A stretch of 64,000 nt of DNA. Origin: Diplonema japonicum. Lineage: Eukaryota > Protista > Euglenozoa: Diplonemea. Positions 1,032 through 64,000 of this stretch are shown piece by piece (position 1 is the first letter of the stretch; every line of letters begins with the position of its first letter). A program made the position numbers and the translations under genes. The notes under the pieces are model-generated. The model was not told the origin of the DNA. It saw nothing but the letters and a program-made list of their open reading frames with translations, and did no database searches. The stretch is from assembly GCA_964019335.1 (NCBI GenBank), contig OZ025662.1:496001-560000 (forward strand), written 5' to 3'.

Positions 1032-1184
1032 GCTGGGGAGGAGAGAGGAGGGAGGGGGTGTGAGTTGAGGAGAGAATGGAGGTTGTTGTACTTGTAGACT
1101 AAATATACTATTCTGTTGTACTGTCTTTCGTATTATTCTTGATGCCATCCTTCACACCACAGCACGACACACACATTTACTAAA

Positions 1185-1526
1185 ATGGCCGACGCCCTTT
1201 TCGCGAAGATGTCCGCAGCCCTCGGGACCCCTGCTGGTCAGGCTGCGGCGAAGAAGATCAACGAGGTGATCACGTACGAGTTCCCCGACACCGGTGTGTC
1301 GTACGTGATGGACCTGAAGGCGGGGAAGGCGTACAAGGGGAAGCACGACGACCCCGCGTGCACCTTCAAGATGGACGAGAAGGTGTTCATTGAGCTTTCG
1401 GGGGGCAAGGCGGACCCCATGGGCCTCTTCATGGAGGGGAAGATCGAGCTCGACGGGGACACCGACATCGCCATGAAGATCGGCAAGGTCCTCAAGACCC
1501 TCGAGAAGGAGATCGCCTCTGCGTAG
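1185..1526 (+). CDS. SCP2: SCP2 sterol carrier/lipid transfer domain protein, copy 1
   Basis: 113 aa with SCP2 signature DDPACTFKMDEKVFIELSGGKADPMGLFMEGKIELDGD; AAAATG start context. Confidence 0.9.
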   Translation: MADALFAKMSAALGTPAGQAAAKKINEVITYEFPDTGVSYVMDLKAGKAYKGKHDDPACTFKMDEKVFIELSGGKADPMGLFMEGKIELDGDTDIAMKIGKVLKTLEKEIASA

Positions 1527-8074: not shown

Positions 8075-9439
<1,365 letters not shown>

Positions 9440-25930: not shown

Positions 25931-25963
<33 letters not shown>

Positions 25964-25964
<1 letters not shown>

Positions 25965-26039
25965 GGGACCAATGTTTCCAACCTCCCTGTGGTGGTTCCT
26001 GGTAATTGTGGTTTGGAGAAACACAAGCGAAAGGGAAAC
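25964..26039 (+). ncRNA. HDV-like self-cleaving ribozyme (family B)
   Basis: P1 GGGGACC/GGTTCCT (G.U first pair), P2 GTTTCC/GGAAAC, P3 ACC/GGT, L3 TCCCTGT, P1.1 CC/GG, P4 TTGT-GTTT/AAAC-ACAA, J4/2 GCGAA (catalytic C 26028). Confidence 0.85.
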
Positions 26040-26412
26040 TCTCGTTCTAAAGCCGTACACGTGGGGAAACCTGGACGGGGGTGGAGAGCCCACCCTACGC
26101 GTGGCGCCAGTTAGCATCGCCCTCAACGGAGAGTCCCTTATCCCATTACATCGAACAAGGAGGTGGCTTCACCAGGTCAGGCAAGTAGCCTCCCCGCGGC
26201 ATCGTGCCAGTGAAGCAAGCCTCGCACAACTCTCCAGTTGGTGTTTAATTGCTTCTGTGGCCCCTCTCCCTATTCCAATTTCCAAGCTTTCTTTACCTCT
26301 CCACTTTTACTTTCTACGGGACCACAGGGAACTTGGGAGGCTTCGGGGCGAAGTTTCACAAGGGTGGCCGCTGTGTCACATACTGCATGGCACCACTAAA
26401 ATCGAGACAACT
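25964..26412 (+). mobile_element. Family B SINE-like element, full-length copy, headed by an HDV-like ribozyme
   Basis: Homologous to 29232-29606 (-) and 43182-43393 (+); flanked by T-runs on both sides. Confidence 0.8.
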
Positions 26413-26433
26413 TTTTTTTTTTTTTTTTTTTAA

Positions 26434-26715
26434 GCTGGTGGGGAGAACATGGAAAATATAAGAAGTACATCAGATGTGTTGTTCGCTGTTGACCTCCTCG
26501 TCGGTAGCGCCCGAGAGGAACGTAATGCAGATGCTCAGGGTGACGAACAGGCAGCAAACTAGTCTTGGTCATCGGGTCGCCCCGGCTGGGGTTGAGCTGT
26601 ACACCGCACGCATTAAGGACACAACGCAGAACGCAGAAGAAGCTACAACTCGGCCGTGCGCCCCCTGTAATCAAATAGGGAGATAGTTCTTGTGCCAACA
26701 ACGGCCTCCTTTAAC
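26434..26715 (+). mobile_element. Family A SINE-like element, copy with a 10-nt deletion in the ribozyme
   Basis: Aligns to 36213-36527 but lacks CATCACCGGT (the P1 3' strand). Confidence 0.8.
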
Positions 26716-28400: not shown

Positions 28401-28522
28401 TATATCCCCCCCCCCAACACTGGCCCCCCCCCCCCCCCCCCCACGATTACTTGCAAGAACATTTTATCTAAACAAAAAAGGGGGTGAGCGTTGGCAGCGT
28501 GTTCTCCTTCTCCTTTTTTTTA

Positions 28523-28710
28523 GGGGTGGGGATAACATGGAAAATATAAGAAGTACATCAGATGTGTTGTTCACCCTGCCAGGGTCGCTGCACGCATTAA
28601 GGACAGAACGCGGAATGCAGCAGAAGCTGCAACGGCCGAGGTACGCCCTCCAATCAAGTAGACAACGCTTGGGCAGGGTGCCACCAACACTGGCCTCAAT
28701 GGCCTTAAAT
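28523..28710 (+). mobile_element. Family A element, internally deleted copy
   Basis: 5' GGTGGGGATAACATGGAAAATATAAGAAGTACATCAGATGTGTTGTTC and 3' CACGCATTAAGGAC..AATCAAGTAGAC retained; ribozyme core missing. Confidence 0.75.
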
Positions 28711-28765: not shown

Positions 28766-30198
28766 CATAGCCTATAACGCAAGCATGTTATCAAATTGAT
28801 ATTTTAAAATACCCGGTATCAAATACCATAACGCAAAAAAGGGCCCATAATCTTGTTACGTACCCGTTATTTTAACGATATCGAATTAAATAACGTTATT
28901 TTAATCGGGCAAATATTAAAATAACGTTATTTTATTCGGAATAACGTTATTTTATTCAATGGATGATCGATGATCAATTTTTTTTTTTTCAAAAACCCTA
29001 TTTTCGAATCCGTCCAGAAAGAATGTGTTCAACAGCTTTTCGGGAAAATAATCCTTTTCTATGTCGTTTCGATACTCTAGTGGGCCGGCTTTGTGTATCT
29101 GGGGCCCCCGGGAGACGAATAGAAGGGTTGTAATGAGTATGGTTTCGATGCTCGCCTCCCATTTTAATTTTGACTTTTGATGTCGCTCCTAGTTAAAATT
29201 TAAACATGAAGGGGGGGAAACTGGTAAAAAGGTAGTCTCAATTTTAGTGCCATGCGGTATGTGACACAGCAGCCACCCCGAAGCCTCGCAAGTCCCCTGT
29301 GGTCCCGTAGTAAGTAAAAGCGGAGAGGTAAAGAAGGTTTTTCAAAAAGGGAGGAGCCACAGAAGCAATTAAACACCAACTGGGGAGTTGTGGGAGGCTT
29401 GCTTCACTGGCACAAGGCCGCGGAGAGGCTACTTGCCACCTGGTGAAACCACCTCCTTGTTCTATTTTTATTGGGATAAGGGACTCTCCATTGAGGGCGA
29501 TGCTAACCGTGTAGGGTGGGCCTCCACCCCCGTCAAGGTTTCCCCACGTGTACGGCTTCAGAATGACCCAGGAACCACCACTGGGAGGTCGGAAACATCG
29601 ATCCCCTAAAAAAGGGGGAAACTAACTTTTCTGGAAAATAATCCTCGTGCACTCGTTAGCTTTCTCTGGAATATCCGCACCAGCACTAAAGAGAGTCCTT
29701 GTCTCCAGACGTTCCTGCCACCACGGACTACTCGTGTTGTAAGAACAGGCTTTTACCCTCTGCTTACGATGCAGCGGACAAAGCGCTGTTCCCTCATGCA
29801 TCTCATGCATCGTCTGGAGTCCCACTGACTCGGGAATCTCTTCTAAGTACTTTCTGGGGGTAGCCATGCCTTCCAAACACCCACAAGTACCCCTGGCTCT
29901 ATCCCTCCCTGTTGCATTCTTGAAACAGCGTCTTCTCATTCTCCAAATTTTCACCGATTAAAATAACGTAAAATAACATAAAATAACGCACCCAAAATTC
30001 GCTAAAATTGGGGTGGGCTTCGGATGTTAAGTTACCCATGTTCATGGTCTCCAAAAATCATATTTCGTGTTTCTGGACCCCATCTCGACATCTGCGGGGG
30101 TATAGAGGACCTCGGCGTGCCCAGGCCAATTTTGCACTATTTAAATACCCGAACCGATTAAAATACCCGATTGGTATCGGTATAACGTGCAGGCTATG
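28766..30198. mobile_element. Non-autonomous DNA transposon with CATAG..CTATG termini and 6-bp TSD CCTCCC; contains a nested family B copy
   Basis: CATAGCCT / AGGCTATG termini; cctccc at 28760-28765 and 30199-30204; AAATAACG subterminal repeats at both ends; shares internal sequence (reverse complement) with 52820-54246. Confidence 0.7.
29232..29606 (-). mobile_element. Family B element, antisense copy with ribozyme P4/J4/2 deleted
   Basis: Reverse complement reads TTTTTTA|GGGGATCGATGTTTCCGACCTCCCAGTGGTGGTTCCTGG...GGCACTAAAATTGAGACTAC. Confidence 0.8.
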
Positions 30199-36212: not shown

Positions 36213-36341
36213 GGTGGTGGGGATAACATGGAAATATAAAGAAGTACATCAGATGTGTTGTTCGCTGTTGACCTCCTCGTCGGTCATCACCGGTAGCGCC
36301 CAAGTGGAAGAAGCAGATGCTCTGGGTGGCGAACAGGCAGC
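36213..36341 (+). ncRNA. HDV-like self-cleaving ribozyme (family A) with J1/2 hairpin insertion
   Basis: P1 GGTGGTG/CATCACC, P1.2 GGATAACAT/GTGTTGTTC, P2 GCTGTTG/CAGGCAGC, P3 ACC/GGT, L3 TCCTCGTC, P1.1 CC/GG, P4 CGCCCA/TGGGTG, J4/2 GCGAA (C 36330). Confidence 0.8.
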
Positions 36342-36527
36342 AAACTACACGGGCTCAGAATCTTGGTTACCCGGGGCGCCCCGGCTGGGGTTGAGCTGCA
36401 CACCGCACGCATTAAGGACACGACGCGAAACGCAAAAGAAGCTACAGCTAGGCCGAGGTGCGCCCCCTGTAATCAAGTAAATGGTGCTTGTGCAGGGTGC
36501 CCCCACCGGCTTCCTTTAAATCATCGA
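36213..36527 (+). mobile_element. Family A SINE-like element, most intact copy, headed by an HDV-like ribozyme
   Basis: Homologous to 26434, 28523 and 60586 copies; between T-runs. Confidence 0.8.
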
Positions 36528-39916: not shown

Positions 39917-40001
39917 ATACTTTTTTTTTTTTTAAACCCCCTTCTTCCCTCTCAGCTCAAACACAGATTATCTCTTTTCGTTCCACCCTCAACTAAACAA
40001 A

Positions 40002-40343
40002 ATGGCCGACGCCCTTTTCGCGAAGATGTCCGCAGCCCTCGGGACCCCTGCTGGTCAGGCTGCGGCGAAGAAGATCAACGAGGTGATCACGTACGAGTTC
40101 CCCGACACCGGTGTGTCGTACGTGATGGACCTGAAGGCGGGGAAGGCGTACAAGGGGAAGCACGACGACCCCGCGTGCACCTTCAAGATGGACGAGAAGG
40201 TGTTCATTGAGCTTTCGGGGGGCAAGGCGGACCCCATGGGCCTCTTCATGGAGGGGAAGATCGAGCTCGACGGGGACACCGACATCGCCATGAAGATCGG
40301 CAAGGTCCTCAAGACCCTCGAGAAGGAGATCGCCTCTGCGTAG
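40002..40343 (+). CDS. SCP2: SCP2 domain protein, copy 2
   Basis: CDS appears identical to 1185-1526. Confidence 0.9.
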   Translation: MADALFAKMSAALGTPAGQAAAKKINEVITYEFPDTGVSYVMDLKAGKAYKGKHDDPACTFKMDEKVFIELSGGKADPMGLFMEGKIELDGDTDIAMKIGKVLKTLEKEIASA

Positions 40344-42745: not shown

Positions 42746-43181
42746 AGAATGAGTGCCTTGAGCATTATATGAGAAATGAGGGGAATGGAGATACATTTAA
42801 GGGGTAAAGATTTTTTCGTTTGTATTATTCTAGAGTTTTTTTTTTCCCCCCCCTTTTTTTTCCCGCCTTAATGTTTTCTTGTTCGTGTGTTTTTTTTTTT
42901 AAACCTGAAGGACACGGGTTAAACTTTTATTCTCACCCTTTCATCAGGGGCCTGAGAACGGGGCACGGTCATAGCATCCACGAACGGGCAATTGTACGAA
43001 GGTGCGCAATATGTTACATAGCTGGGCATGGCAGCCTGCCCTCTTTCTCCTCTCTTTCTTCCCCGTCTTTCTGCACGGTATCGATAGCTGCACGGCATTT
43101 CTTCCCCCCCCCCCTTTTTTTGTTTCGGTTTTTCTTTCTCCCCTCCGCATCTAGATATTTCTTTTTTTAAATACTGTAAAA

Positions 43182-43393
43182 CAATGTTTCCAACCTCCCA
43201 TGGTGGTTCCTGGTAATTGTGGTTTGGAGGGAGACACGTAGCGAAAAGGAAACTCTCGTTCTTAAACCGTACTCCAGGGGAAACCTGGACGGCTAAGCTT
43301 TCTTTACGGACTTGGGATGCTTCGGGGCGAAGCTTCACAAGGGTGGCAGCTGTGTCACATACCGCATGGCACCGCTAAGAAATTGAGACAACT
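43182..43393 (+). mobile_element. Family B element, 5'-clipped and internally deleted copy
   Basis: AATGTTTCCAACCTCCCATGGTGGTTCCTGGTAATTGTGG..GCGAAAAGGAAAC..GGCACCGCTAAGAAATTGAGACAACT; P1 5' strand missing. Confidence 0.8.
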
Positions 43394-43488
43394 CTTTTCC
43401 CTTTTCATTGCTCGTTTCCCTTTCTCATCATAATAATAAGACAAAAAAAAAAAGAGGGAAGGAGAAAGGGATATTAAAAAAAAAAAAA

Positions 43489-45616: not shown

Positions 45617-48600
45617 ATGTCGTTTATAAGCGAAAGACCACTGTATAGCAACAGTGGGGATGCGTTCAGCTCACCGTTTGCCCAACGTGGGTCGCTGAGC
45701 CCGCCTGTGAAGGTACGTGGCGGGGAAGCTGTGGCCGATGCGGTTCAGTTACAGGAAAAGCCGGCTGACTCTCCCAAGCCGCCGTCTGTGGACAAGAACG
45801 CTTTGAGTGGAGACTTTCGGTCGATCAGAGGGATTCCAAACTGGTTGCTGGACACACTTGACGAATACAAACTACCAGTGCCCCGGCCGTTACAAGAACG
45901 CTCGCTGCACTTGCTGAGCAAACACTGCAACGTGATGACTGTGAGCGGGAGGCGTGAAGGGAGGGGTGTGACAATGGCCATTGGAGGCTTGGGGAAGCTA
46001 AACTTCGCCTGCAGAGGCCTACAGGTCGTGATATGCACCGTGGACACCGCAGCAGGGAACATGATCTCCGAGTACATGCGTTCTATGCTTCGAAAATCGC
46101 TGAAAGACGCCGACGCGGTGTCAGAAAGCGCCTGGCACACCATGATACTCTCTGCTACGGACACCACAGAGATCGCTGACAACATAGAAAGGCTCAGCAG
46201 TGCTGGGATGAGATCCGAGCCGTATTGCATGGCGGTGGTAGGGTCCCCTTCGCGTCTCAGGGAGCTTATCGAGCTTGACGCTGTCGACCTCGCACCCTTG
46301 CGCTTCTTCGGCATCCATCACACATCGGAGTTCGCTACCGAGGCCACCACCCCTGATCTAGCAGCCATCGCGTCGTCCTTACCCCCCAACGTTCAGATGC
46401 TTGCCATGCTCGACAAGCCCCTTCCCGTGTCGGGGTTCGATGCCTCCATCCTCGGAGACAGCCCGTTGACCTTTGAACAGGAGCCCTCGGAAAAACCACG
46501 TTTCGTGATGCAATACCACGTTAGTGTAAAGGAGAAGGGGAGGTTCGAGGCTGTGGGACAGATATGCGAGTCGAACCCAGGCGAGAAGATCATTCTGATC
46601 TGCGAATCGAAGCGAACGTGTGAGAACCTCGCCCGCAGCATGCAGCTAACGAGATTCGGTCGCGGCCGAACTGTGTACATACACGGGGGCTTCACTAACG
46701 CTGTGAAGGAAGAGGCTGCCGAGCTGTTCTGCAACGGGGTGTACCCGCTCCTTGTAACTACCGATGCCATCCTTGAGGTCATGCCGTTTCAAACAGTCCG
46801 GCTGGTTGTTGGTTATGATGCGCCTCCGTCCAGCATCGCGCACGTGAACCGCACCACGCTGCTCTCCCCTCTTGTCGAAGGTTCCTCCCTCATCACCCTC
46901 TACACACCCTCCGACAGACGGTCCGGCGGCTTGAGCAGAGCAGGCACCCCTGCACGCTTGGACACCATCCCCAACCTCCTCACCAAGACGCGCACGCCCC
47001 TTGCCACCACCACGAACACTACTCAGGACAGGCCCAAGTGGAAGCGCATCACCGAACGCGAGCGTCCAGTACGAAAGGTCGTCCAGAAGCAGCCCCTCCG
47101 TGCACCACCGACACCCCCTCTGAAGAAATGGGCCCCATCAACTAAATGGGGTACACGTGACCCAGGACCCAGCCCAAAGAAGCCCTCCCAGACTCCGCCC
47201 ACTCCTTCCCGGAAGAAGTGGTTCCCGGCAGGGAGCTGGGATCTCAACAATCTGCGGCATATGGTGCAGTCGCCCACCCAGACACAGAGGAAATACTCTG
47301 CCAGCAGTTCATACAAAGAGGAGCCAACACCCATCCCTCCACCATTGCCCGCACTGGCACCCCCTACGCCTCCCACGGCAACGTACAACCCTGCAGCCAG
47401 GCATTTGGAGTTCGCAAGTTCGAGGAAGCAGCCACCGCCGAAGCCTGCTGCGCTGAAACTGCCTGACACTGCGACTGACACCGAGGATGAGGTGCAGGGG
47501 ACAGAGGCGGGAGTCGACGACTCGTTAGAGGAGGCGACACAGCCAGTAGAGCCGCGGTATATGGAAGAAGAACAGGAGCAGGATGAGGTACTGCAGGAGG
47601 AATCGTCACTGGAAGAGCCGGAGTCAATACAGGCGGAACATACGCGAAGATGGGAGACAGAGGACCAACAGTTCGCACAGGGAGAGGGGTCGCTCTCATT
47701 GGCAGAGGAAGCTCAAATGTCGCAATCTTCGTCGCATGCATCAGAAGCACGCGAACAGATGTCGCAGTCGTCTTCCTCGCATGCTAGAGTGGGACGTGAA
47801 CAAATGTCGCAATCGTCTTCCTCGCATGCAGCAGAGGCACATGAACAGATGTCGCAGTCGTCTTCATCGCATGCAAGAGAGGCACGTGAACAGGTGTCGC
47901 AATCGTCGTCGTCGCGTACTGAGGCGCGCGAACGAGTGTCGCAGTCGTCTTCATCGCATGCAAGAGTGGGACGTGAACAAATGTCGCAATCGTCTTCCTC
48001 GCATGCAGAGGAAGCACGTGAACAGATGTCGCAGTCGTCTTCCTCACATGCAAGAGTGGAACGTGAACAAATGTCGCAATCGTCTTCGTCGCATGCAGCA
48101 GAGGAAGCACGCGAACAGATGTCGCAATCGTCTTCCTCGCATGCAGAGGAAGCACGTGAACAAGCGTCGCAGTCGTCTTCTTCTCATACAGGGGAGGCAC
48201 GTGAACAGATATCGCAATCGTCTTCCTCGCATGCAGAAGAAGCACGCAAACAAATATCGCAAGCGTTTTCGTCGCATGCACGTGAACAGATGTCACAGTC
48301 GTCGTCGTCGCATGCAGAGGAAGCACGTGAACAGATATCGCGGTCGTCTTCTCACGTGTCGCGTGAGAGTTCGCACACTACACGGCAGTCCTCCACCTTG
48401 TCGCAGCAGGTACAACGCGAGGAGGCGCTTGAGGGGAATGCATCGCGGTCGTCATCCGCATCGCAGGTGACGACACGGTCGAAGAGCAGCTCTGTTCATA
48501 AGTCGAGCGACTCGAGCTTCGGGAGGGAGGGCTTGACGCTGCAGATGGAGGTGGACTCCTTCCTCCCCGAGGAGCGGATGCTCTCTGAAATGTTCATGGT

Positions 48601-49015
48601 GGCAGACGAGGACGGGAACGGACTGATCTCCTTCGAGGAGCTCAAAACACTTCTCTACGAAACCACAGGAGAAGAGCTCACGAGGAACCAGTACGGGCAG
48701 CTTCTGGACGACGATGAAGTCCAACCTAGCGGGCTAGTCCTCTTCGGGTTCTTGAAGTCTTGCCTGGACAGGACACGTGGTGTCCAAGCCGTTTACTCAG
48801 AATGGAAGAAGACCATGGCTGAAGAGGAGTACTACGATAGCTTCCAAAACATGTCCTTTCAACGGCTTGAGACGGAAGGCGAAGATGACATTGAGTTAAA
48901 CGATGAGGAGGCTCCTTCCTTCCGCCGCTTAACCTCCCGGAAGTCATCGTCAATGCACTCCATCTTGAAGTCCATTCGAAGCGTGAATTCAGAGAAAAGC
49001 CTTACTAGCATGTGA
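45617..49015 (+). CDS. Degenerate DEAD-box (eIF4A-like) helicase fold + Pro-rich linker + 15-aa Ser-rich repeats + EF-hand
   Basis: Motif order retained but catalytic residues lost; EF-hand DEDGNGLISFEE. Confidence 0.75.
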   Translation: MSFISERPLYSNSGDAFSSPFAQRGSLSPPVKVRGGEAVADAVQLQEKPADSPKPPSVDKNALSGDFRSIRGIPNWLLDTLDEYKLPVPRPLQERSLHLLSKHCNVMTVSGRREGRGVTMAIGGLGKLNFACRGLQVVICTVDTAAGNMISEYMRSMLRKSLKDADAVSESAWHTMILSATDTTEIADNIERLSSAGMRSEPYCMAVVGSPSRLRELIELDAVDLAPLRFFGIHHTSEFATEATTPDLAAIASSLPPNVQMLAMLDKPLPVSGFDASILGDSPLTFEQEPSEKPRFVMQYHVSVKEKGRFEAVGQICESNPGEKIILICESKRTCENLARSMQLTRFGRGRTVYIHGGFTNAVKEEAAELFCNGVYPLLVTTDAILEVMPFQTVRLVVGYDAPPSSIAHVNRTTLLSPLVEGSSLITLYTPSDRRSGGLSRAGTPARLDTIPNLLTKTRTPLATTTNTTQDRPKWKRITERERPVRKVVQKQPLRAPPTPPLKKWAPSTKWGTRDPGPSPKKPSQTPPTPSRKKWFPAGSWDLNNLRHMVQSPTQTQRKYSASSSYKEEPTPIPPPLPALAPPTPPTATYNPAARHLEFASSRKQPPPKPAALKLPDTATDTEDEVQGTEAGVDDSLEEATQPVEPRYMEEEQEQDEVLQEESSLEEPESIQAEHTRRWETEDQQFAQGEGSLSLAEEAQMSQSSSHASEAREQMSQSSSSHARVGREQMSQSSSSHAAEAHEQMSQSSSSHAREAREQVSQSSSSRTEARERVSQSSSSHARVGREQMSQSSSSHAEEAREQMSQSSSSHARVEREQMSQSSSSHAAEEAREQMSQSSSSHAEEAREQASQSSSSHTGEAREQISQSSSSHAEEARKQISQAFSSHAREQMSQSSSSHAEEAREQISRSSSHVSRESSHTTRQSSTLSQQVQREEALEGNASRSSSASQVTTRSKSSSVHKSSDSSFGREGLTLQMEVDSFLPEERMLSEMFMVADEDGNGLISFEELKTLLYETTGEELTRNQYGQLLDDDEVQPSGLVLFGFLKSCLDRTRGVQAVYSEWKKTMAEEEYYDSFQNMSFQRLETEGEDDIELNDEEAPSFRRLTSRKSSSMHSILKSIRSVNSEKSLTSM
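47714..48368 (+). repeat. Coding minisatellite, ~45-bp unit x ~15 (QMSQSSSSHAEEARE)
   Basis: Direct inspection of DNA and translation. Confidence 0.9.
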
Positions 49016-63778: not shown

Positions 63779-63899
63779 GAACTGCTTTTTTATCTTTTCT
63801 GTTTTTTTTTTTTTTTTTTTTCAACATCGCCTTTCGTTTCCCCCACGTTAACATTTGAATATAAACAGTTATTAAAAAAAAAAAAAAAAAACACACAAA

Positions 63900-64000
63900 A
63901 TGGCCGACGCCCTTTTCGCGAAGATGTCCGCAGCCCTCGGGACCCCTGCTGGTCAGGCTGCGGCGAAGAAGATCAACGAGGTGATCACGTACGAGTTCCC
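63900..64000 (+). CDS. SCP2: SCP2 domain protein, copy 3 (3'-partial at window edge)
   Basis: First 101 nt identical to copies 1 and 2. Confidence 0.9.
   Translation, partial: MADALFAKMSAALGTPAGQAAAKKINEVITYEF

What the first reader, a model, noticed from the sequence alone, without database searches (positions are those of the whole stretch)
25964..26039. HDV-like self-cleaving ribozyme forming the exact 5' end of repeat family B
Seen in sequence: every element of the HDV nested double pseudoknot occurs in the correct order. These are P1 GGGGACC (25964-70) / GGTTCCT (25994-26000) with a G.U first pair, P2 GTTTCC/GGAAAC, P3 ACC/GGT around a 7-nt L3 TCCCTGT, P1.1 GG (26001-02), P4 hairpin 26006-26026, and J4/2 GCGAA with C26028 in the C75 position. 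The predicted cut site, 5' of G25964, coincides with the repeat boundary defined by the 29606 copy, where a C>T change in P1 still pairs as a wobble. Established: HDV-like ribozymes head R2, RTE and trypanosomatid L1Tc/ingi/SIDER elements. Inference: this sequence shows no evident similarity to the ingi 77-nt signature, so it may be an undescribed family. One imperfection is two extra unpaired nt before the P2 3' strand.
Basis: partly seen in the sequence, partly recalled or inferred. Interest (0 to 1): 0.92.

Follow-up and report, generated by a model that had tools for sequence, protein, structure and literature searches.

The report
Self-cutting RNA heads a retroposon
The first 76 bases of an abundant, recently active 448-base retroposon in a diplonemid-like protist genome have every sequence feature of an HDV-type self-cleaving ribozyme, a known way for such elements to cut themselves out of longer transcripts, though cleavage itself has not been tested.

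Summary

Chance is unlikely. A strict HDV descriptor hits the real window twice, both times at the head of a repeat family. It hits in 8 of 60 dinucleotide shuffles. Rfam HDV models match end to end but below their gathering scores (30.4 bits against 50; 22.4 against 44).

G25964 is the exact first base of a 448-nt SINE-like element:
- At least 95 near-intact copies exist; 58 have an identical ribozyme.
- Copies sit in T-runs with T-rich target duplications.
- 5'-truncated copies exist.
- In every clear case the element has the same orientation as the flanking genes.

APE+RT LINEs of the same genome begin with the same fold but have different P1, P2 and P4 sequences.

One detail is wrong. The 29606 copy lacks P4, J4/2 and the P2 3' strand, and it belongs to a larger composite repeat.

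Best reading (0.8): a canonical HDV-like ribozyme that frees the retroposon RNA from polycistronic transcripts. This is a new member of a known kind, in a host group where none of my three paper searches returned a report of one.

No RNA-end or cleavage data could be obtained. Other notes of this scan flag similar ribozyme-headed elements elsewhere in this genome.

The parts
25934..25963 (+). Target T-run (29 T) plus A. The last 21 nt (25943-25963, T20+A) form the upstream copy of the target-site duplication.
   Evidence: the same T20A follows the element at 26412-26432.
25964..26039 (+). HDV-like ribozyme, 76 nt. Predicted cleavage is 5' of G25964.
   Evidence: RF00094 30.4 bits, model 1-89; RF02682 22.4 bits, model 1-74; descriptor against shuffles; 58 identical copies in the genome.
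25964..25970 (+). P1 5' strand GGGGACC. It pairs with 25994-26000 (GGTTCCT); the first pair is G.U.
   Evidence: Read from the sequence; descriptor.
25974..25979 (+). P2 5' strand GTTTCC. It pairs with 26034-26039 (GGAAAC) to form the outer pseudoknot.
   Evidence: Duplex energy -5.6 kcal/mol.
25981..25993 (+). P3 (ACC/GGT) around L3 TCCCTGT. C25985-C25986 pair with G26001-G26002 (P1.1). The U at L3 position 1 and the G at position 6 are kept in all related heads.
25994..26002 (+). P1 3' strand GGTTCCT followed by the P1.1 GG.
26006..26026 (+). P4 hairpin: TTGTG/CACAA, a bulged G, TTT/AAA and a GGAG loop.
   Evidence: Also predicted by MFE folding. The base stem TTGTG/CACAA is kept in the older subfamily.
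26027..26033 (+). J4/2 GCGAAAG, with C26028 in the catalytic C75 position and A26030-A26031 in the A77/A78 positions. It is one nucleotide longer than in genomic HDV.
   Evidence: aligned to GGCuAA of RF00094.
26040..26411 (+). Body of the 448-nt retroposon (family B). It ends ...AAAATCGAGACAAC. No ORF, no Rfam match, and no similarity to the LINEs I fetched.
26412..26432 (+). 3' T-run (20 T) plus A: the downstream copy of the target-site duplication.
29228..29606 (-). Old family-B-derived copy. P1-P3-P1' are kept (C>T wobble in P1), but P4, J4/2 and the P2 3' strand are deleted. It is part of a larger composite repeat.
43176..43396 (+). Decayed copy of the older subfamily. The first ~6 nt are lost or mutated and there is an internal deletion.
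36213..36342 (+). Second descriptor hit: an HDV-like head of repeat family A with a 45-nt J1/2. This is a separate finding, listed here for context.

Best explanation
Window 25964-26411 is one copy of a 448-nt non-autonomous retroposon (family B) in a diplonemid-like euglenozoan genome. Its first 76 nt encode a canonical HDV-type self-cleaving ribozyme.

Proposed mechanism:
1. The element has no recognisable promoter. It lies in the sense orientation inside long one-strand gene arrays, so it is transcribed as part of a polycistronic precursor (inferred).
2. The nested double pseudoknot folds and C26028 catalyses cleavage 5' of G25964 (inferred). This releases an RNA whose first base is the first base of the element.
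3. An APE+RT LINE of the same genome reverse-transcribes that RNA by target-primed reverse transcription. The LINE nicks the A-run strand of a T-run target and primes on U residues read through at the RNA 3' end (inferred from the insertion anatomy).
4. This gives T-run target duplications, 0-7 extra T after ...CAAC, occasional 5' truncation, and extra bases at the 5' junction.

Shown here: the motif, its rarity by chance, the exact common 5' end, the insertion anatomy, the orientation bias, and the same fold at LINE heads. Inferred: catalysis, co-transcription, the identity of the LINE partner, and U-run priming.
For: Motif:
- All HDV elements are present in order at 25964-26039.
- RF00094 matches model positions 1-89 at 30.4 bits, E=0.0065 for the 221-nt search. 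RF02682 matches 1-74 at 22.4 bits and starts at 25964.
- The strict descriptor gives 2 hits in the real window, both at repeat heads. In 60 shuffles the mean was 0.27.
- Given the core alone, shuffled flanks complete the fold in only 0.19% of trials.

RNA 5' end:
- 30 of 30 copies begin at GGGGACC after unrelated T-rich flanks. One copy (L020) has a partial 5' duplication.
- Target duplications are a T-run plus one base, 6-21 nt.
- 5'-truncated copies exist: L126, L129, L130, L132, L137.
- The 3' 200 nt gives 273 candidate copies against 171 for the 5' 200 nt.
- Retrocopies of other RNAs in this genome keep their spliced leader (L045, L167, L047). Family B copies carry none, so their 5' end is not made by trans-splicing.

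Activity of the family:
- Among the 150 scored candidates, 58 ribozymes are identical and about 37 score 98-110 bits.

Same device elsewhere:
- LINE-1 and LINE-2 heads (APE+RT) start at GGGGCT, with P1 GGGGCT/GGCCCT, P2 CTGGGGA/TCCCCAG, P3 ACC/GGT, L3 TCCACGT, GG, P4 and GCAAA.
- Between the two LINE families, P4 shows one C-G to U-A double change and two wobble-compatible changes. 97.3% of cells pair, against 51-70% with slid partners.
- Metagenomic sequences sharing the core have other P1, P2 and P4 pairs.

Orientation:
- The element has the same orientation as the neighbouring long ORF in 20 of 20 clear flanks.

Precedent:
- R2 (PMC3774820) and L1Tc/NARTc (PMC3185411, PMC4035085) use 5' HDV-like ribozymes in this way.
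Against: - There is no cleavage assay and no RNA 5'-end data. The public runs were available only as contigs.
- Both Rfam matches are below gathering score, and the match is lost in the whole-window scan.
- Nested-only MFE folding prefers an alternative helix, GGGGAC with GUUUCC, and gives z = 0.40. The proposed P1+P3+P4 scores -13.8 against an MFE of -19.2 kcal/mol, before adding P2 and P1.1, which the folding model cannot represent.
- J4/2 is one nucleotide longer than in HDV.
- True covariation is thin. There is one double compensatory event, and it is in the LINE heads, not in family B itself. The cross-family comparisons use a descriptor that demands pairing.
- No autonomous partner shares the family B body or its 3' end.
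Confidence: 0.8

Rival explanations
1. The 76 nt are a relic or mimic of an HDV-type fold that no longer cleaves. The exact 5' end of family B RNA would come from transcription starting at G25964, driven by an internal promoter as the Pr77 DNA element of L1Tc does. This function could also exist alongside the ribozyme.
For: - Pr77 of L1Tc is both a promoter and a ribozyme (PMC3383444), so a 5' head can serve transcription.
- The Rfam scores are below gathering.
- MFE folding favours an alternative helix.
- J4/2 is longer than usual.
Against: - Every position known to matter in HDV ribozymes is kept: G1.U37, two G-C pairs in P1.1, the U...G pair in L3, and C followed by NAA in J4/2.
- 58 copies keep the motif identical.
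- The two subfamily-defining changes I identified (A25980 to G, T25988 to A) fall in unpaired positions; the C>T change in some 29606-type copies makes a wobble pair.
- LINE heads keep the fold although their helix sequences differ.
- The orientation bias fits co-transcription.
Confidence: 0.13
2. The match is a chance resemblance in a T/G-rich repeat end, with no structural meaning.
For: The motif is short, and I wrote my descriptor after seeing the sequence. 8 of 60 shuffled windows give some hit somewhere.
Against: - A chance hit anywhere in 128 kb is already uncommon. Landing on the one base and strand that begins the repeat is roughly a 1-in-a-million event per position.
- The only other hit in the window is also at a repeat head.
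- Two independent Rfam models align end to end.
- The core recurs at LINE heads.
Confidence: 0.03
3. The element is really on the minus strand, a poly(A)-tailed retroposon ending ...GGTCCCC(A)n. The motif would then lie on the antisense strand at the 3' end and would never be made as RNA in this sense.
For: Both ends abut T-runs on the plus strand, which are A-runs on the minus strand. The flanks alone are therefore symmetric.
Against: - Copies are truncated from the GGGG end, not from the CAAC end.
- There are more 3' than 5' parts.
- Non-T extra bases and a partial duplication lie at the GGGG junction, for example aacat and aag. They would interrupt a poly(A) tail.
- The LINEs with the same head carry their ORFs in this orientation and end in T-runs.
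Confidence: 0.02

Closest known systems
HDV-like ribozymes at the 5' ends of non-LTR retrotransposons (R2 and others)
   Same: - A nested double pseudoknot at the very first base of the element, releasing the element RNA from a co-transcript (PMC3774820 abstract).
- The core ACC-UCCNNGU-GGU, then the P1 3' strand, then GG is the same as in many environmental HDV-like motifs.
- Non-autonomous derivatives that keep the ribozyme are known, namely the R2 SIDEs (PMC3414825).
   Different: - The host is a diplonemid-like euglenozoan.
- Insertion is not site-specific in rDNA.
- The likely mobilising LINEs have an APE endonuclease, not the R2-type restriction-like one.
- Insertion is into T-runs, and the 3' end is a sense-strand T-run instead of poly(A) or an R2 3' UTR.
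L1TcRz / Pr77 of the L1Tc-ingi clade and its short derivatives NARTc, RIME and SIDER (trypanosomatids)
   Same: - The host is also a euglenozoan with polycistronic transcription.
- A ribozyme of about 77 nt sits at the 5' end of both a LINE and its short non-autonomous elements.
- It releases the element RNA from read-through transcripts (PMC3185411, PMC4035085).
   Different: - L1Tc starts CCCTG, and its P1 and P1.1 depart from canonical HDV (PMC4035085; primers in PMC3185411). This one starts with G and fits the canonical pattern.
- INGI elements have poly(A) tails and an RNase H domain (PMC12278014). Here the tails are T-runs, and Pfam sees no RNase H in LINE-1.
- I saw no sequence similarity by eye; no formal alignment was done.
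Hepatitis delta virus genomic ribozyme (Rfam RF00094) and HDV-F-prausnitzii (RF02682)
   Same: - Full-length alignment to both models.
- Shared CCUCC...GG core, a G.U first pair, a GC(N)AA J4/2, and the P4 position.
   Different: - Scores are 30.4 and 22.4 bits, below the gathering scores of 50 and 44.
- P4 is shorter and the helix sequences differ.
- The context is a retroposon, not a circular RNA replicon or a bacterial locus.

Membership tests
HDV-like self-cleaving ribozyme | P1 helix of 6-7 bp that starts at the cleavage-site nucleotide, with G1 paired to U. | tested here: met
   GGGGACC 25964-70 pairs with GGTTCCT 25994-26000: 7 of 7 pairs, including G25964.U26000.
HDV-like self-cleaving ribozyme | P1.1: two G-C pairs between the L3 CC and the GG that directly follows the P1 3' strand. 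| tested here: met
   C25985 and C25986 pair with G26002 and G26001. The pairs never vary in the LINE heads.
HDV-like self-cleaving ribozyme | P3 of 3 bp closing a 7-8 nt L3, and a P2 pseudoknot joining the segment 5' of P3 to the 3' end. | tested here: met
   P3 is ACC/GGT, L3 is TCCCTGT, and P2 is GTTTCC/GGAAAC with 6 bp.
HDV-like self-cleaving ribozyme | A catalytic cytosine in J4/2 followed by NAA, after a P4 hairpin. | tested here: met
   P4 is 26006-26026. G26027, C26028, G26029, A26030, A26031 align to GGCuAA of RF00094. One extra unpaired nucleotide lies before P2.
HDV-like self-cleaving ribozyme | Reaches the curated Rfam gathering score. | tested here: not met
   RF00094 scores 30.4 against 50; RF02682 scores 22.4 against 44. 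There is no hit at gathering threshold. These models are built on a narrow set of sequences, so this lowers but does not remove the membership claim.
HDV-like self-cleaving ribozyme | Covariation supporting the helices. | tested here: inconclusive
   Family B copies are nearly identical or are dead copies. The LINE heads show one double compensatory pair and two one-sided changes in P4. Across families, P1, P2 and P4 differ while still pairing, but those segments were chosen by a descriptor that demands pairing.
HDV-like self-cleaving ribozyme | Site-specific self-cleavage that gives a 5'-OH product and depends on the J4/2 cytosine. | not testable with these tools
   This needs in vitro transcription or 5'-OH end mapping. 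The public runs were available only as contigs.
L1Tc/ingi Pr77-hallmark elements | The conserved 77-nt Pr77 sequence at the 5' end. | tested here: inconclusive
   I compared only by eye with the L1Tc 5' fragments implied by the primers in PMC3185411. L1Tc starts CCCTG, this element starts GGGGACC, and no alignable stretch was seen. No reference sequence was on hand for a formal alignment.
L1Tc/ingi Pr77-hallmark elements | A poly(A) tail, and an APE-RT-RNase H LINE partner. | tested here: not met
   Family B and the ribozyme-headed LINEs end in sense-strand T-runs. LINE-1 has APE and RT only in Pfam. INGI features are taken from PMC12278014.
R2 retrotransposons | Site-specific insertion in 28S rDNA, and a restriction-like endonuclease. 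| tested here: not met
   Copies are dispersed on many contigs in T-runs. The LINEs carry an APE-type endonuclease.

The most novel reading that the evidence does not exclude
This genome may host a guild of promoter-less retroposons: family B, family A, and the LINE-1 and LINE-2 families. They would pair a canonical HDV-type 5' ribozyme with a mirror image of L1 integration. The endonuclease nicks after an A-run, and the A-run primes on an oligo(U) 3' end that is read through from the previous insertion site. The elements therefore land in, and recreate, the polypyrimidine tracts of polycistronic units in the sense orientation. That would be an undescribed non-LTR lineage and priming mode in diplonemids.
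Probability: 0.35. Interest if true: 0.7.

Novelty: new member of a known kind. Interest (0 to 1): 0.5.

Why it matters
HDV-like ribozymes that free retrotransposon RNA from co-transcripts are established in animals and in trypanosomatids. Here the same device appears in canonical form in a diplonemid-like marine protist. Neither the Diplonema genome paper (zero uses of the word "ribozyme") nor my three paper searches report it for diplonemids.

The element is young and abundant: 58 copies have an identical ribozyme. That makes it a clean substrate for testing ribozyme-dependent retroposition in an organism that transcribes its genes polycistronically.

The surrounding anatomy is the less expected part, and it may be the more interesting lead:
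- insertion into T-runs, with T-run 3' ends;
- strict sense orientation relative to neighbouring genes;
- LINE heads whose ribozyme overlaps the start of ORF1;
- spliced-leader-headed retrocopies in the same genome.

Tried and rejected
- **Rfam at gathering threshold on the window:** no hit.
- **Whole-genome RF00094 search:** no match at E<=10, because 30 bits is not significant in 62.5 Mb.
- **Whole-window E-value scan:** only A/T-hairpin noise; the HDV match was lost to the filters.
- **RNA evidence:** the runs holding the element are available only as Logan contigs, so no starts, ends or strand could be read. The one true RNA run laid nothing.
- **The look-up of encoding contigs:** I could not fetch Diplonema papillatum LINE loci to look for orthologous heads.
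- **MAFFT alignment of ribozymes from different families:** misaligned P1 and P4. The single-sequence model R1 also aligned the 3' halves of distant relatives poorly. I therefore ran no pooled covariation count across families, only the count on the homologous LINE heads.
- **MFE folding:** gives no support (z = 0.40). It cannot represent the pseudoknots, so I do not count it as evidence against.
- **Search for an autonomous partner by similarity:** none of 22 RT-bearing loci shares the family B body or 3' end. L006 and L021, which diverge after about 200-260 nt, are fragments next to ordinary genes.
- **Minus-strand poly(A) reading:** rejected on the truncation polarity and the junction bases.
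- **Formal alignment to Pr77:** not done. No reference sequence was available through the tools, and I did not type one in.

Full report
**1. Observation**

The sequence at 25964-26039 (+) reads GGGGACC AAT GTTTCC A ACC TCCCTGT GGT GGTTCCT GG TAA [TTGTGGTTTGGAGAAACACAA] GCGAA AG GGAAAC.
- P1 has 7 of 7 pairs, and its first pair is G25964.U26000.
- P3 (ACC/GGT) encloses a 7-nt L3. The L3 bases C25985-C25986 can pair with G26001-G26002 (P1.1).
- P4 is 26006-26026.
- C26028 sits in a GC(N)AA J4/2.
- P2 (GTTTCC/GGAAAC) closes the outer pseudoknot.
- The U at L3 position 1 and the G at position 6 are also present. From my own knowledge of the HDV structure, these are the positions of the U20.G25 pair of HDV.
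- The "two extra unpaired nt" are A26032 and G26033. Relative to genomic HDV this is one extra nucleotide.

**2. Is it more than chance?**

- Rfam at gathering thresholds finds nothing in the window.
- In a targeted 221-nt scan, RF00094 (HDV_ribozyme) aligns over its whole length (1-89) at 30.4 bits, E=0.0065. RF02682 (HDV-F-prausnitzii) aligns over 1-74 at 22.4 bits and starts exactly at 25964. Both are below gathering score.
- I wrote a strict descriptor. It requires P1 of 6-7 bp starting at a G, P3 of 3 bp, L3 of 6-8 nt with CC at positions 2-3, GG directly after the P1 3' strand, P2 of 5-7 bp, a P4 stem, and GC.AA in J4/2.
- On both strands of the real window it hits twice: here, and at 36213-36342, the head of a different repeat family.
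- Sixty dinucleotide-preserving shuffles gave a mean of 0.27 hits, and 8 of 60 had any hit. The chance of a hit starting on one given base and strand is therefore of the order of 1 in a million.
- With the core held fixed and the flanks shuffled, the full fold appears in 0.19% of trials.
- The descriptor was written after I had seen the sequence, but its features are the textbook HDV ones.

**3. What the element is**

*Copy number and ends*
- The first 200 nt recur at 100% identity on many contigs of the 62.5-Mb assembly.
- A covariance model built from this one sequence and its P1/P3/P4 pairs (R1) finds 143 matches among the 150 candidates scored. 58 are identical, about 37 score 98-110 bits, and a decayed tail runs down to 23 bits.
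- In all 30 fetched loci, similarity starts exactly at GGGGACC after unrelated, T-rich flanks.
- The element is 448 nt and ends ...AAAATCGAGACAAC, followed by a T-run.

*Insertion anatomy*
- Target-site duplications are a T-run plus one non-T base, 6-21 nt long. Examples are TTTTATT, TTTTTC, TTTTTTA and T20A in the window copy.
- There are 0-7 extra T between CAAC and the duplication.
- Some copies have extra bases at the 5' junction (aag, aacat, G-runs). One has a partial duplication of the first 14 nt.

*Polarity*
- Copies truncated from the GGGG end exist.
- The 3' 200 nt has more candidate copies than the 5' 200 nt, 273 against 171.
- Together these fix the polarity: GGGG... is the 5' end of an RNA copied by target-primed reverse transcription.
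- The body has no ORF, no Rfam match and no similarity to the LINEs I fetched.

*Other copies in the window*
- The window holds two further, defective copies.
- Its closest relatives in the genome share a conserved upstream flank (TTCCAGAAAAGTTAGTTTCCCCCTTTTTTA). This is therefore a larger composite repeat carrying a dead family B head, not a clean witness of the boundary.

**4. Host and context**

- All long ORFs of the window lie on the + strand.
- A 39-nt spliced-leader-like sequence (...AGCTACAGTTTCTGTACTTTATTG) is fused to some LINE copies.
- The LINE protein has a 100%-identical entry from a EukProt transcriptome, so it is transcribed. Its next named relatives are Diplonema papillatum LINEs at 33-48% identity.
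- The genome is therefore a euglenozoan, most likely a diplonemid.
- In 20 of 20 flanks with a clear long open frame, the neighbouring gene has the same orientation as the family B copy. This fits co-transcription within polycistronic units. It could also result from insertion into sense-strand polypyrimidine tracts.

**5. The same device at LINE heads**

- Two related LINE families (LINE-1, a 2034-aa ORF with APE and RT domains; and LINE-2) begin at GGGGCT after a T-run plus a few A.
- They fold as follows: P1 GGGGCT/GGCCCT, a 40-45-nt J1/2, P2 CTGGGGA/TCCCCAG, P3 ACC/GGT, L3 TCCA(C/A)GT, GG, P4, and GCAAA.
- Rfam does not detect this fold, presumably because of the long J1/2.
- On an alignment of nine LINE heads, P2, P3, P1.1 and P4 pair in 97.3% of cells, against 51-70% when the partners are slid.
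- P4 shows one C-G to U-A double change and two wobble-compatible changes between the two families. That is only one compensatory event, so it is consistent but thin.
- These LINEs also end in a sense-strand T-run.
- Family B copies are found inserted in LINE T-tails (L045, L164).
- I found no LINE that shares the family B body or 3' end, so the partner is inferred only from the shared head type and T-run ends.

**6. Wider family**

- A scan of metagenome contigs for the core AACCTCCNNGTGGTGGN{1,2}CCTGG returned 70 loci. Most are bacterial coding-sequence look-alikes.
- About a dozen are clear HDV-like motifs with quite different P1, P2 and P4 sequences: L058, L061, L076, L082, L086, L089, L093, L098, L101, L115, L121.
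- Model R1 recovers several of them at E of 1e-4 to 1e-7 in that search space.
- The family B head therefore shares its invariant core with a broad natural class of HDV-like motifs. The helices differ while still pairing.

**7. Points against**

- No cleavage or RNA-end data exist. The runs that hold the element are available only as contigs.
- The Rfam scores are sub-threshold.
- Nested-only folding prefers an alternative helix (1-6 with 11-16) and gives z = 0.40. P1+P3+P4 evaluates to -13.8 kcal/mol against an MFE of -19.2, before adding P2 (about -5.6) and P1.1, which the model cannot represent.

**8. Comparison with what is known**

- 5' HDV-like ribozymes that release element RNA from co-transcripts are established for R2 (PMC3774820) and for L1Tc/NARTc and the ingi clade (PMC3185411, PMC4035085). 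Non-autonomous derivatives that keep the ribozyme are also known (PMC3414825).
- This head works like those.
- It is not a Pr77-type element by the features I could check. L1Tc starts CCCTG and departs from canonical HDV in P1 and P1.1. INGI elements have poly(A) tails and RNase H.
- It is not R2-like in its endonuclease or its target.
- The Diplonema papillatum genome paper never uses the word "ribozyme" and defers a rigorous treatment of transposable elements (PMC10161547).

**9. Verdict**

- It is a new member of a known kind in a new host lineage.
- The T-run and oligo(U) integration anatomy is the more novel, still inferred, aspect.
- Other first-stage notes of this scan flag ribozyme-headed elements on this window (s1-862124, s1-862114) and elsewhere in this genome (s1-866383, s1-862095). 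I tested the first three in part and did not test the last.

Noticed in passing
L045 (reverse strand, about 8720-8760); L167; L047:1750-1788: Some LINE retrocopies carry the 39-nt spliced leader at their 5' end. In a LINE-1 copy (L045) and a LINE-2 copy (L167) it is fused at the same place, ...CTTTATTG|GGCTGG, which is LINE nt 3 and is not preceded by AG. A third LINE family (APE+RT+RNase H, 1963 aa, A-rich 3' end) has the full leader directly before its 5' UTR. Whether this reflects trans-spliced templates or template switching is unresolved.
   Followed up: partly
L046 (reverse strand) 8588-8475; L048:1682-1791: In LINE-1 and LINE-2, the ATG at the J1/2-P2 junction opens a 585-592-aa ORF. 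P2, P3, L3, the P1 3' strand and P4 of the ribozyme are therefore coding. This ORF lies entirely inside the 5' part of the ~2030-2050-aa ORF, which is open in another frame.
   Followed up: partly
window 36213-36342, 26434-26560, 28512-28593: Repeat family A has its own HDV-like head: P1 GGTGGTG/CATCACC, a 45-nt J1/2, and L3 TCCTCGTC. The copy right after the family B element (26434-) lacks CATCACCGGT (the P1 3' strand plus P1.1) and so is defective.
   Followed up: partly
window 29607-29640 (-) and loci L146-L149, L153, L156, L159, L161, L163: About ten copies share the flank TTCCAGAAAAGTTAGTTTCCCCCTTTTTTA upstream of a ribozyme-dead family B head. This is a composite repeat that has spread as a larger unit.
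   Followed up: partly
30 family B loci (L001-L030) and LINE 3' ends in L045/L046: Family B and the ribozyme-headed LINEs end in sense-strand T-runs and duplicate T-run targets. This implies nicking after an A-run and priming on a U-run at the RNA 3' end, a mirror image of L1.
   Followed up: partly
window 1182-1481, 39999-40298, 63895-64000: A stretch of at least 300 nt occurs twice at 100% identity, 38.8 kb apart. It begins again at the window's end.
   Followed up: no
window 47654-48365: A tandem array of 45-nt units (12 registers, 61-90% identity) lies inside the 1132-aa ORF 45617-49015.
   Followed up: no
L051:1723-1800: A LINE copy keeps the LINE-1 head only as far as the P1 3' strand, then diverges (P4, J4/2 and the P2 3' strand are replaced). 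It still carries ORFs of 582 and 1370 aa (APE+RT).
   Followed up: no
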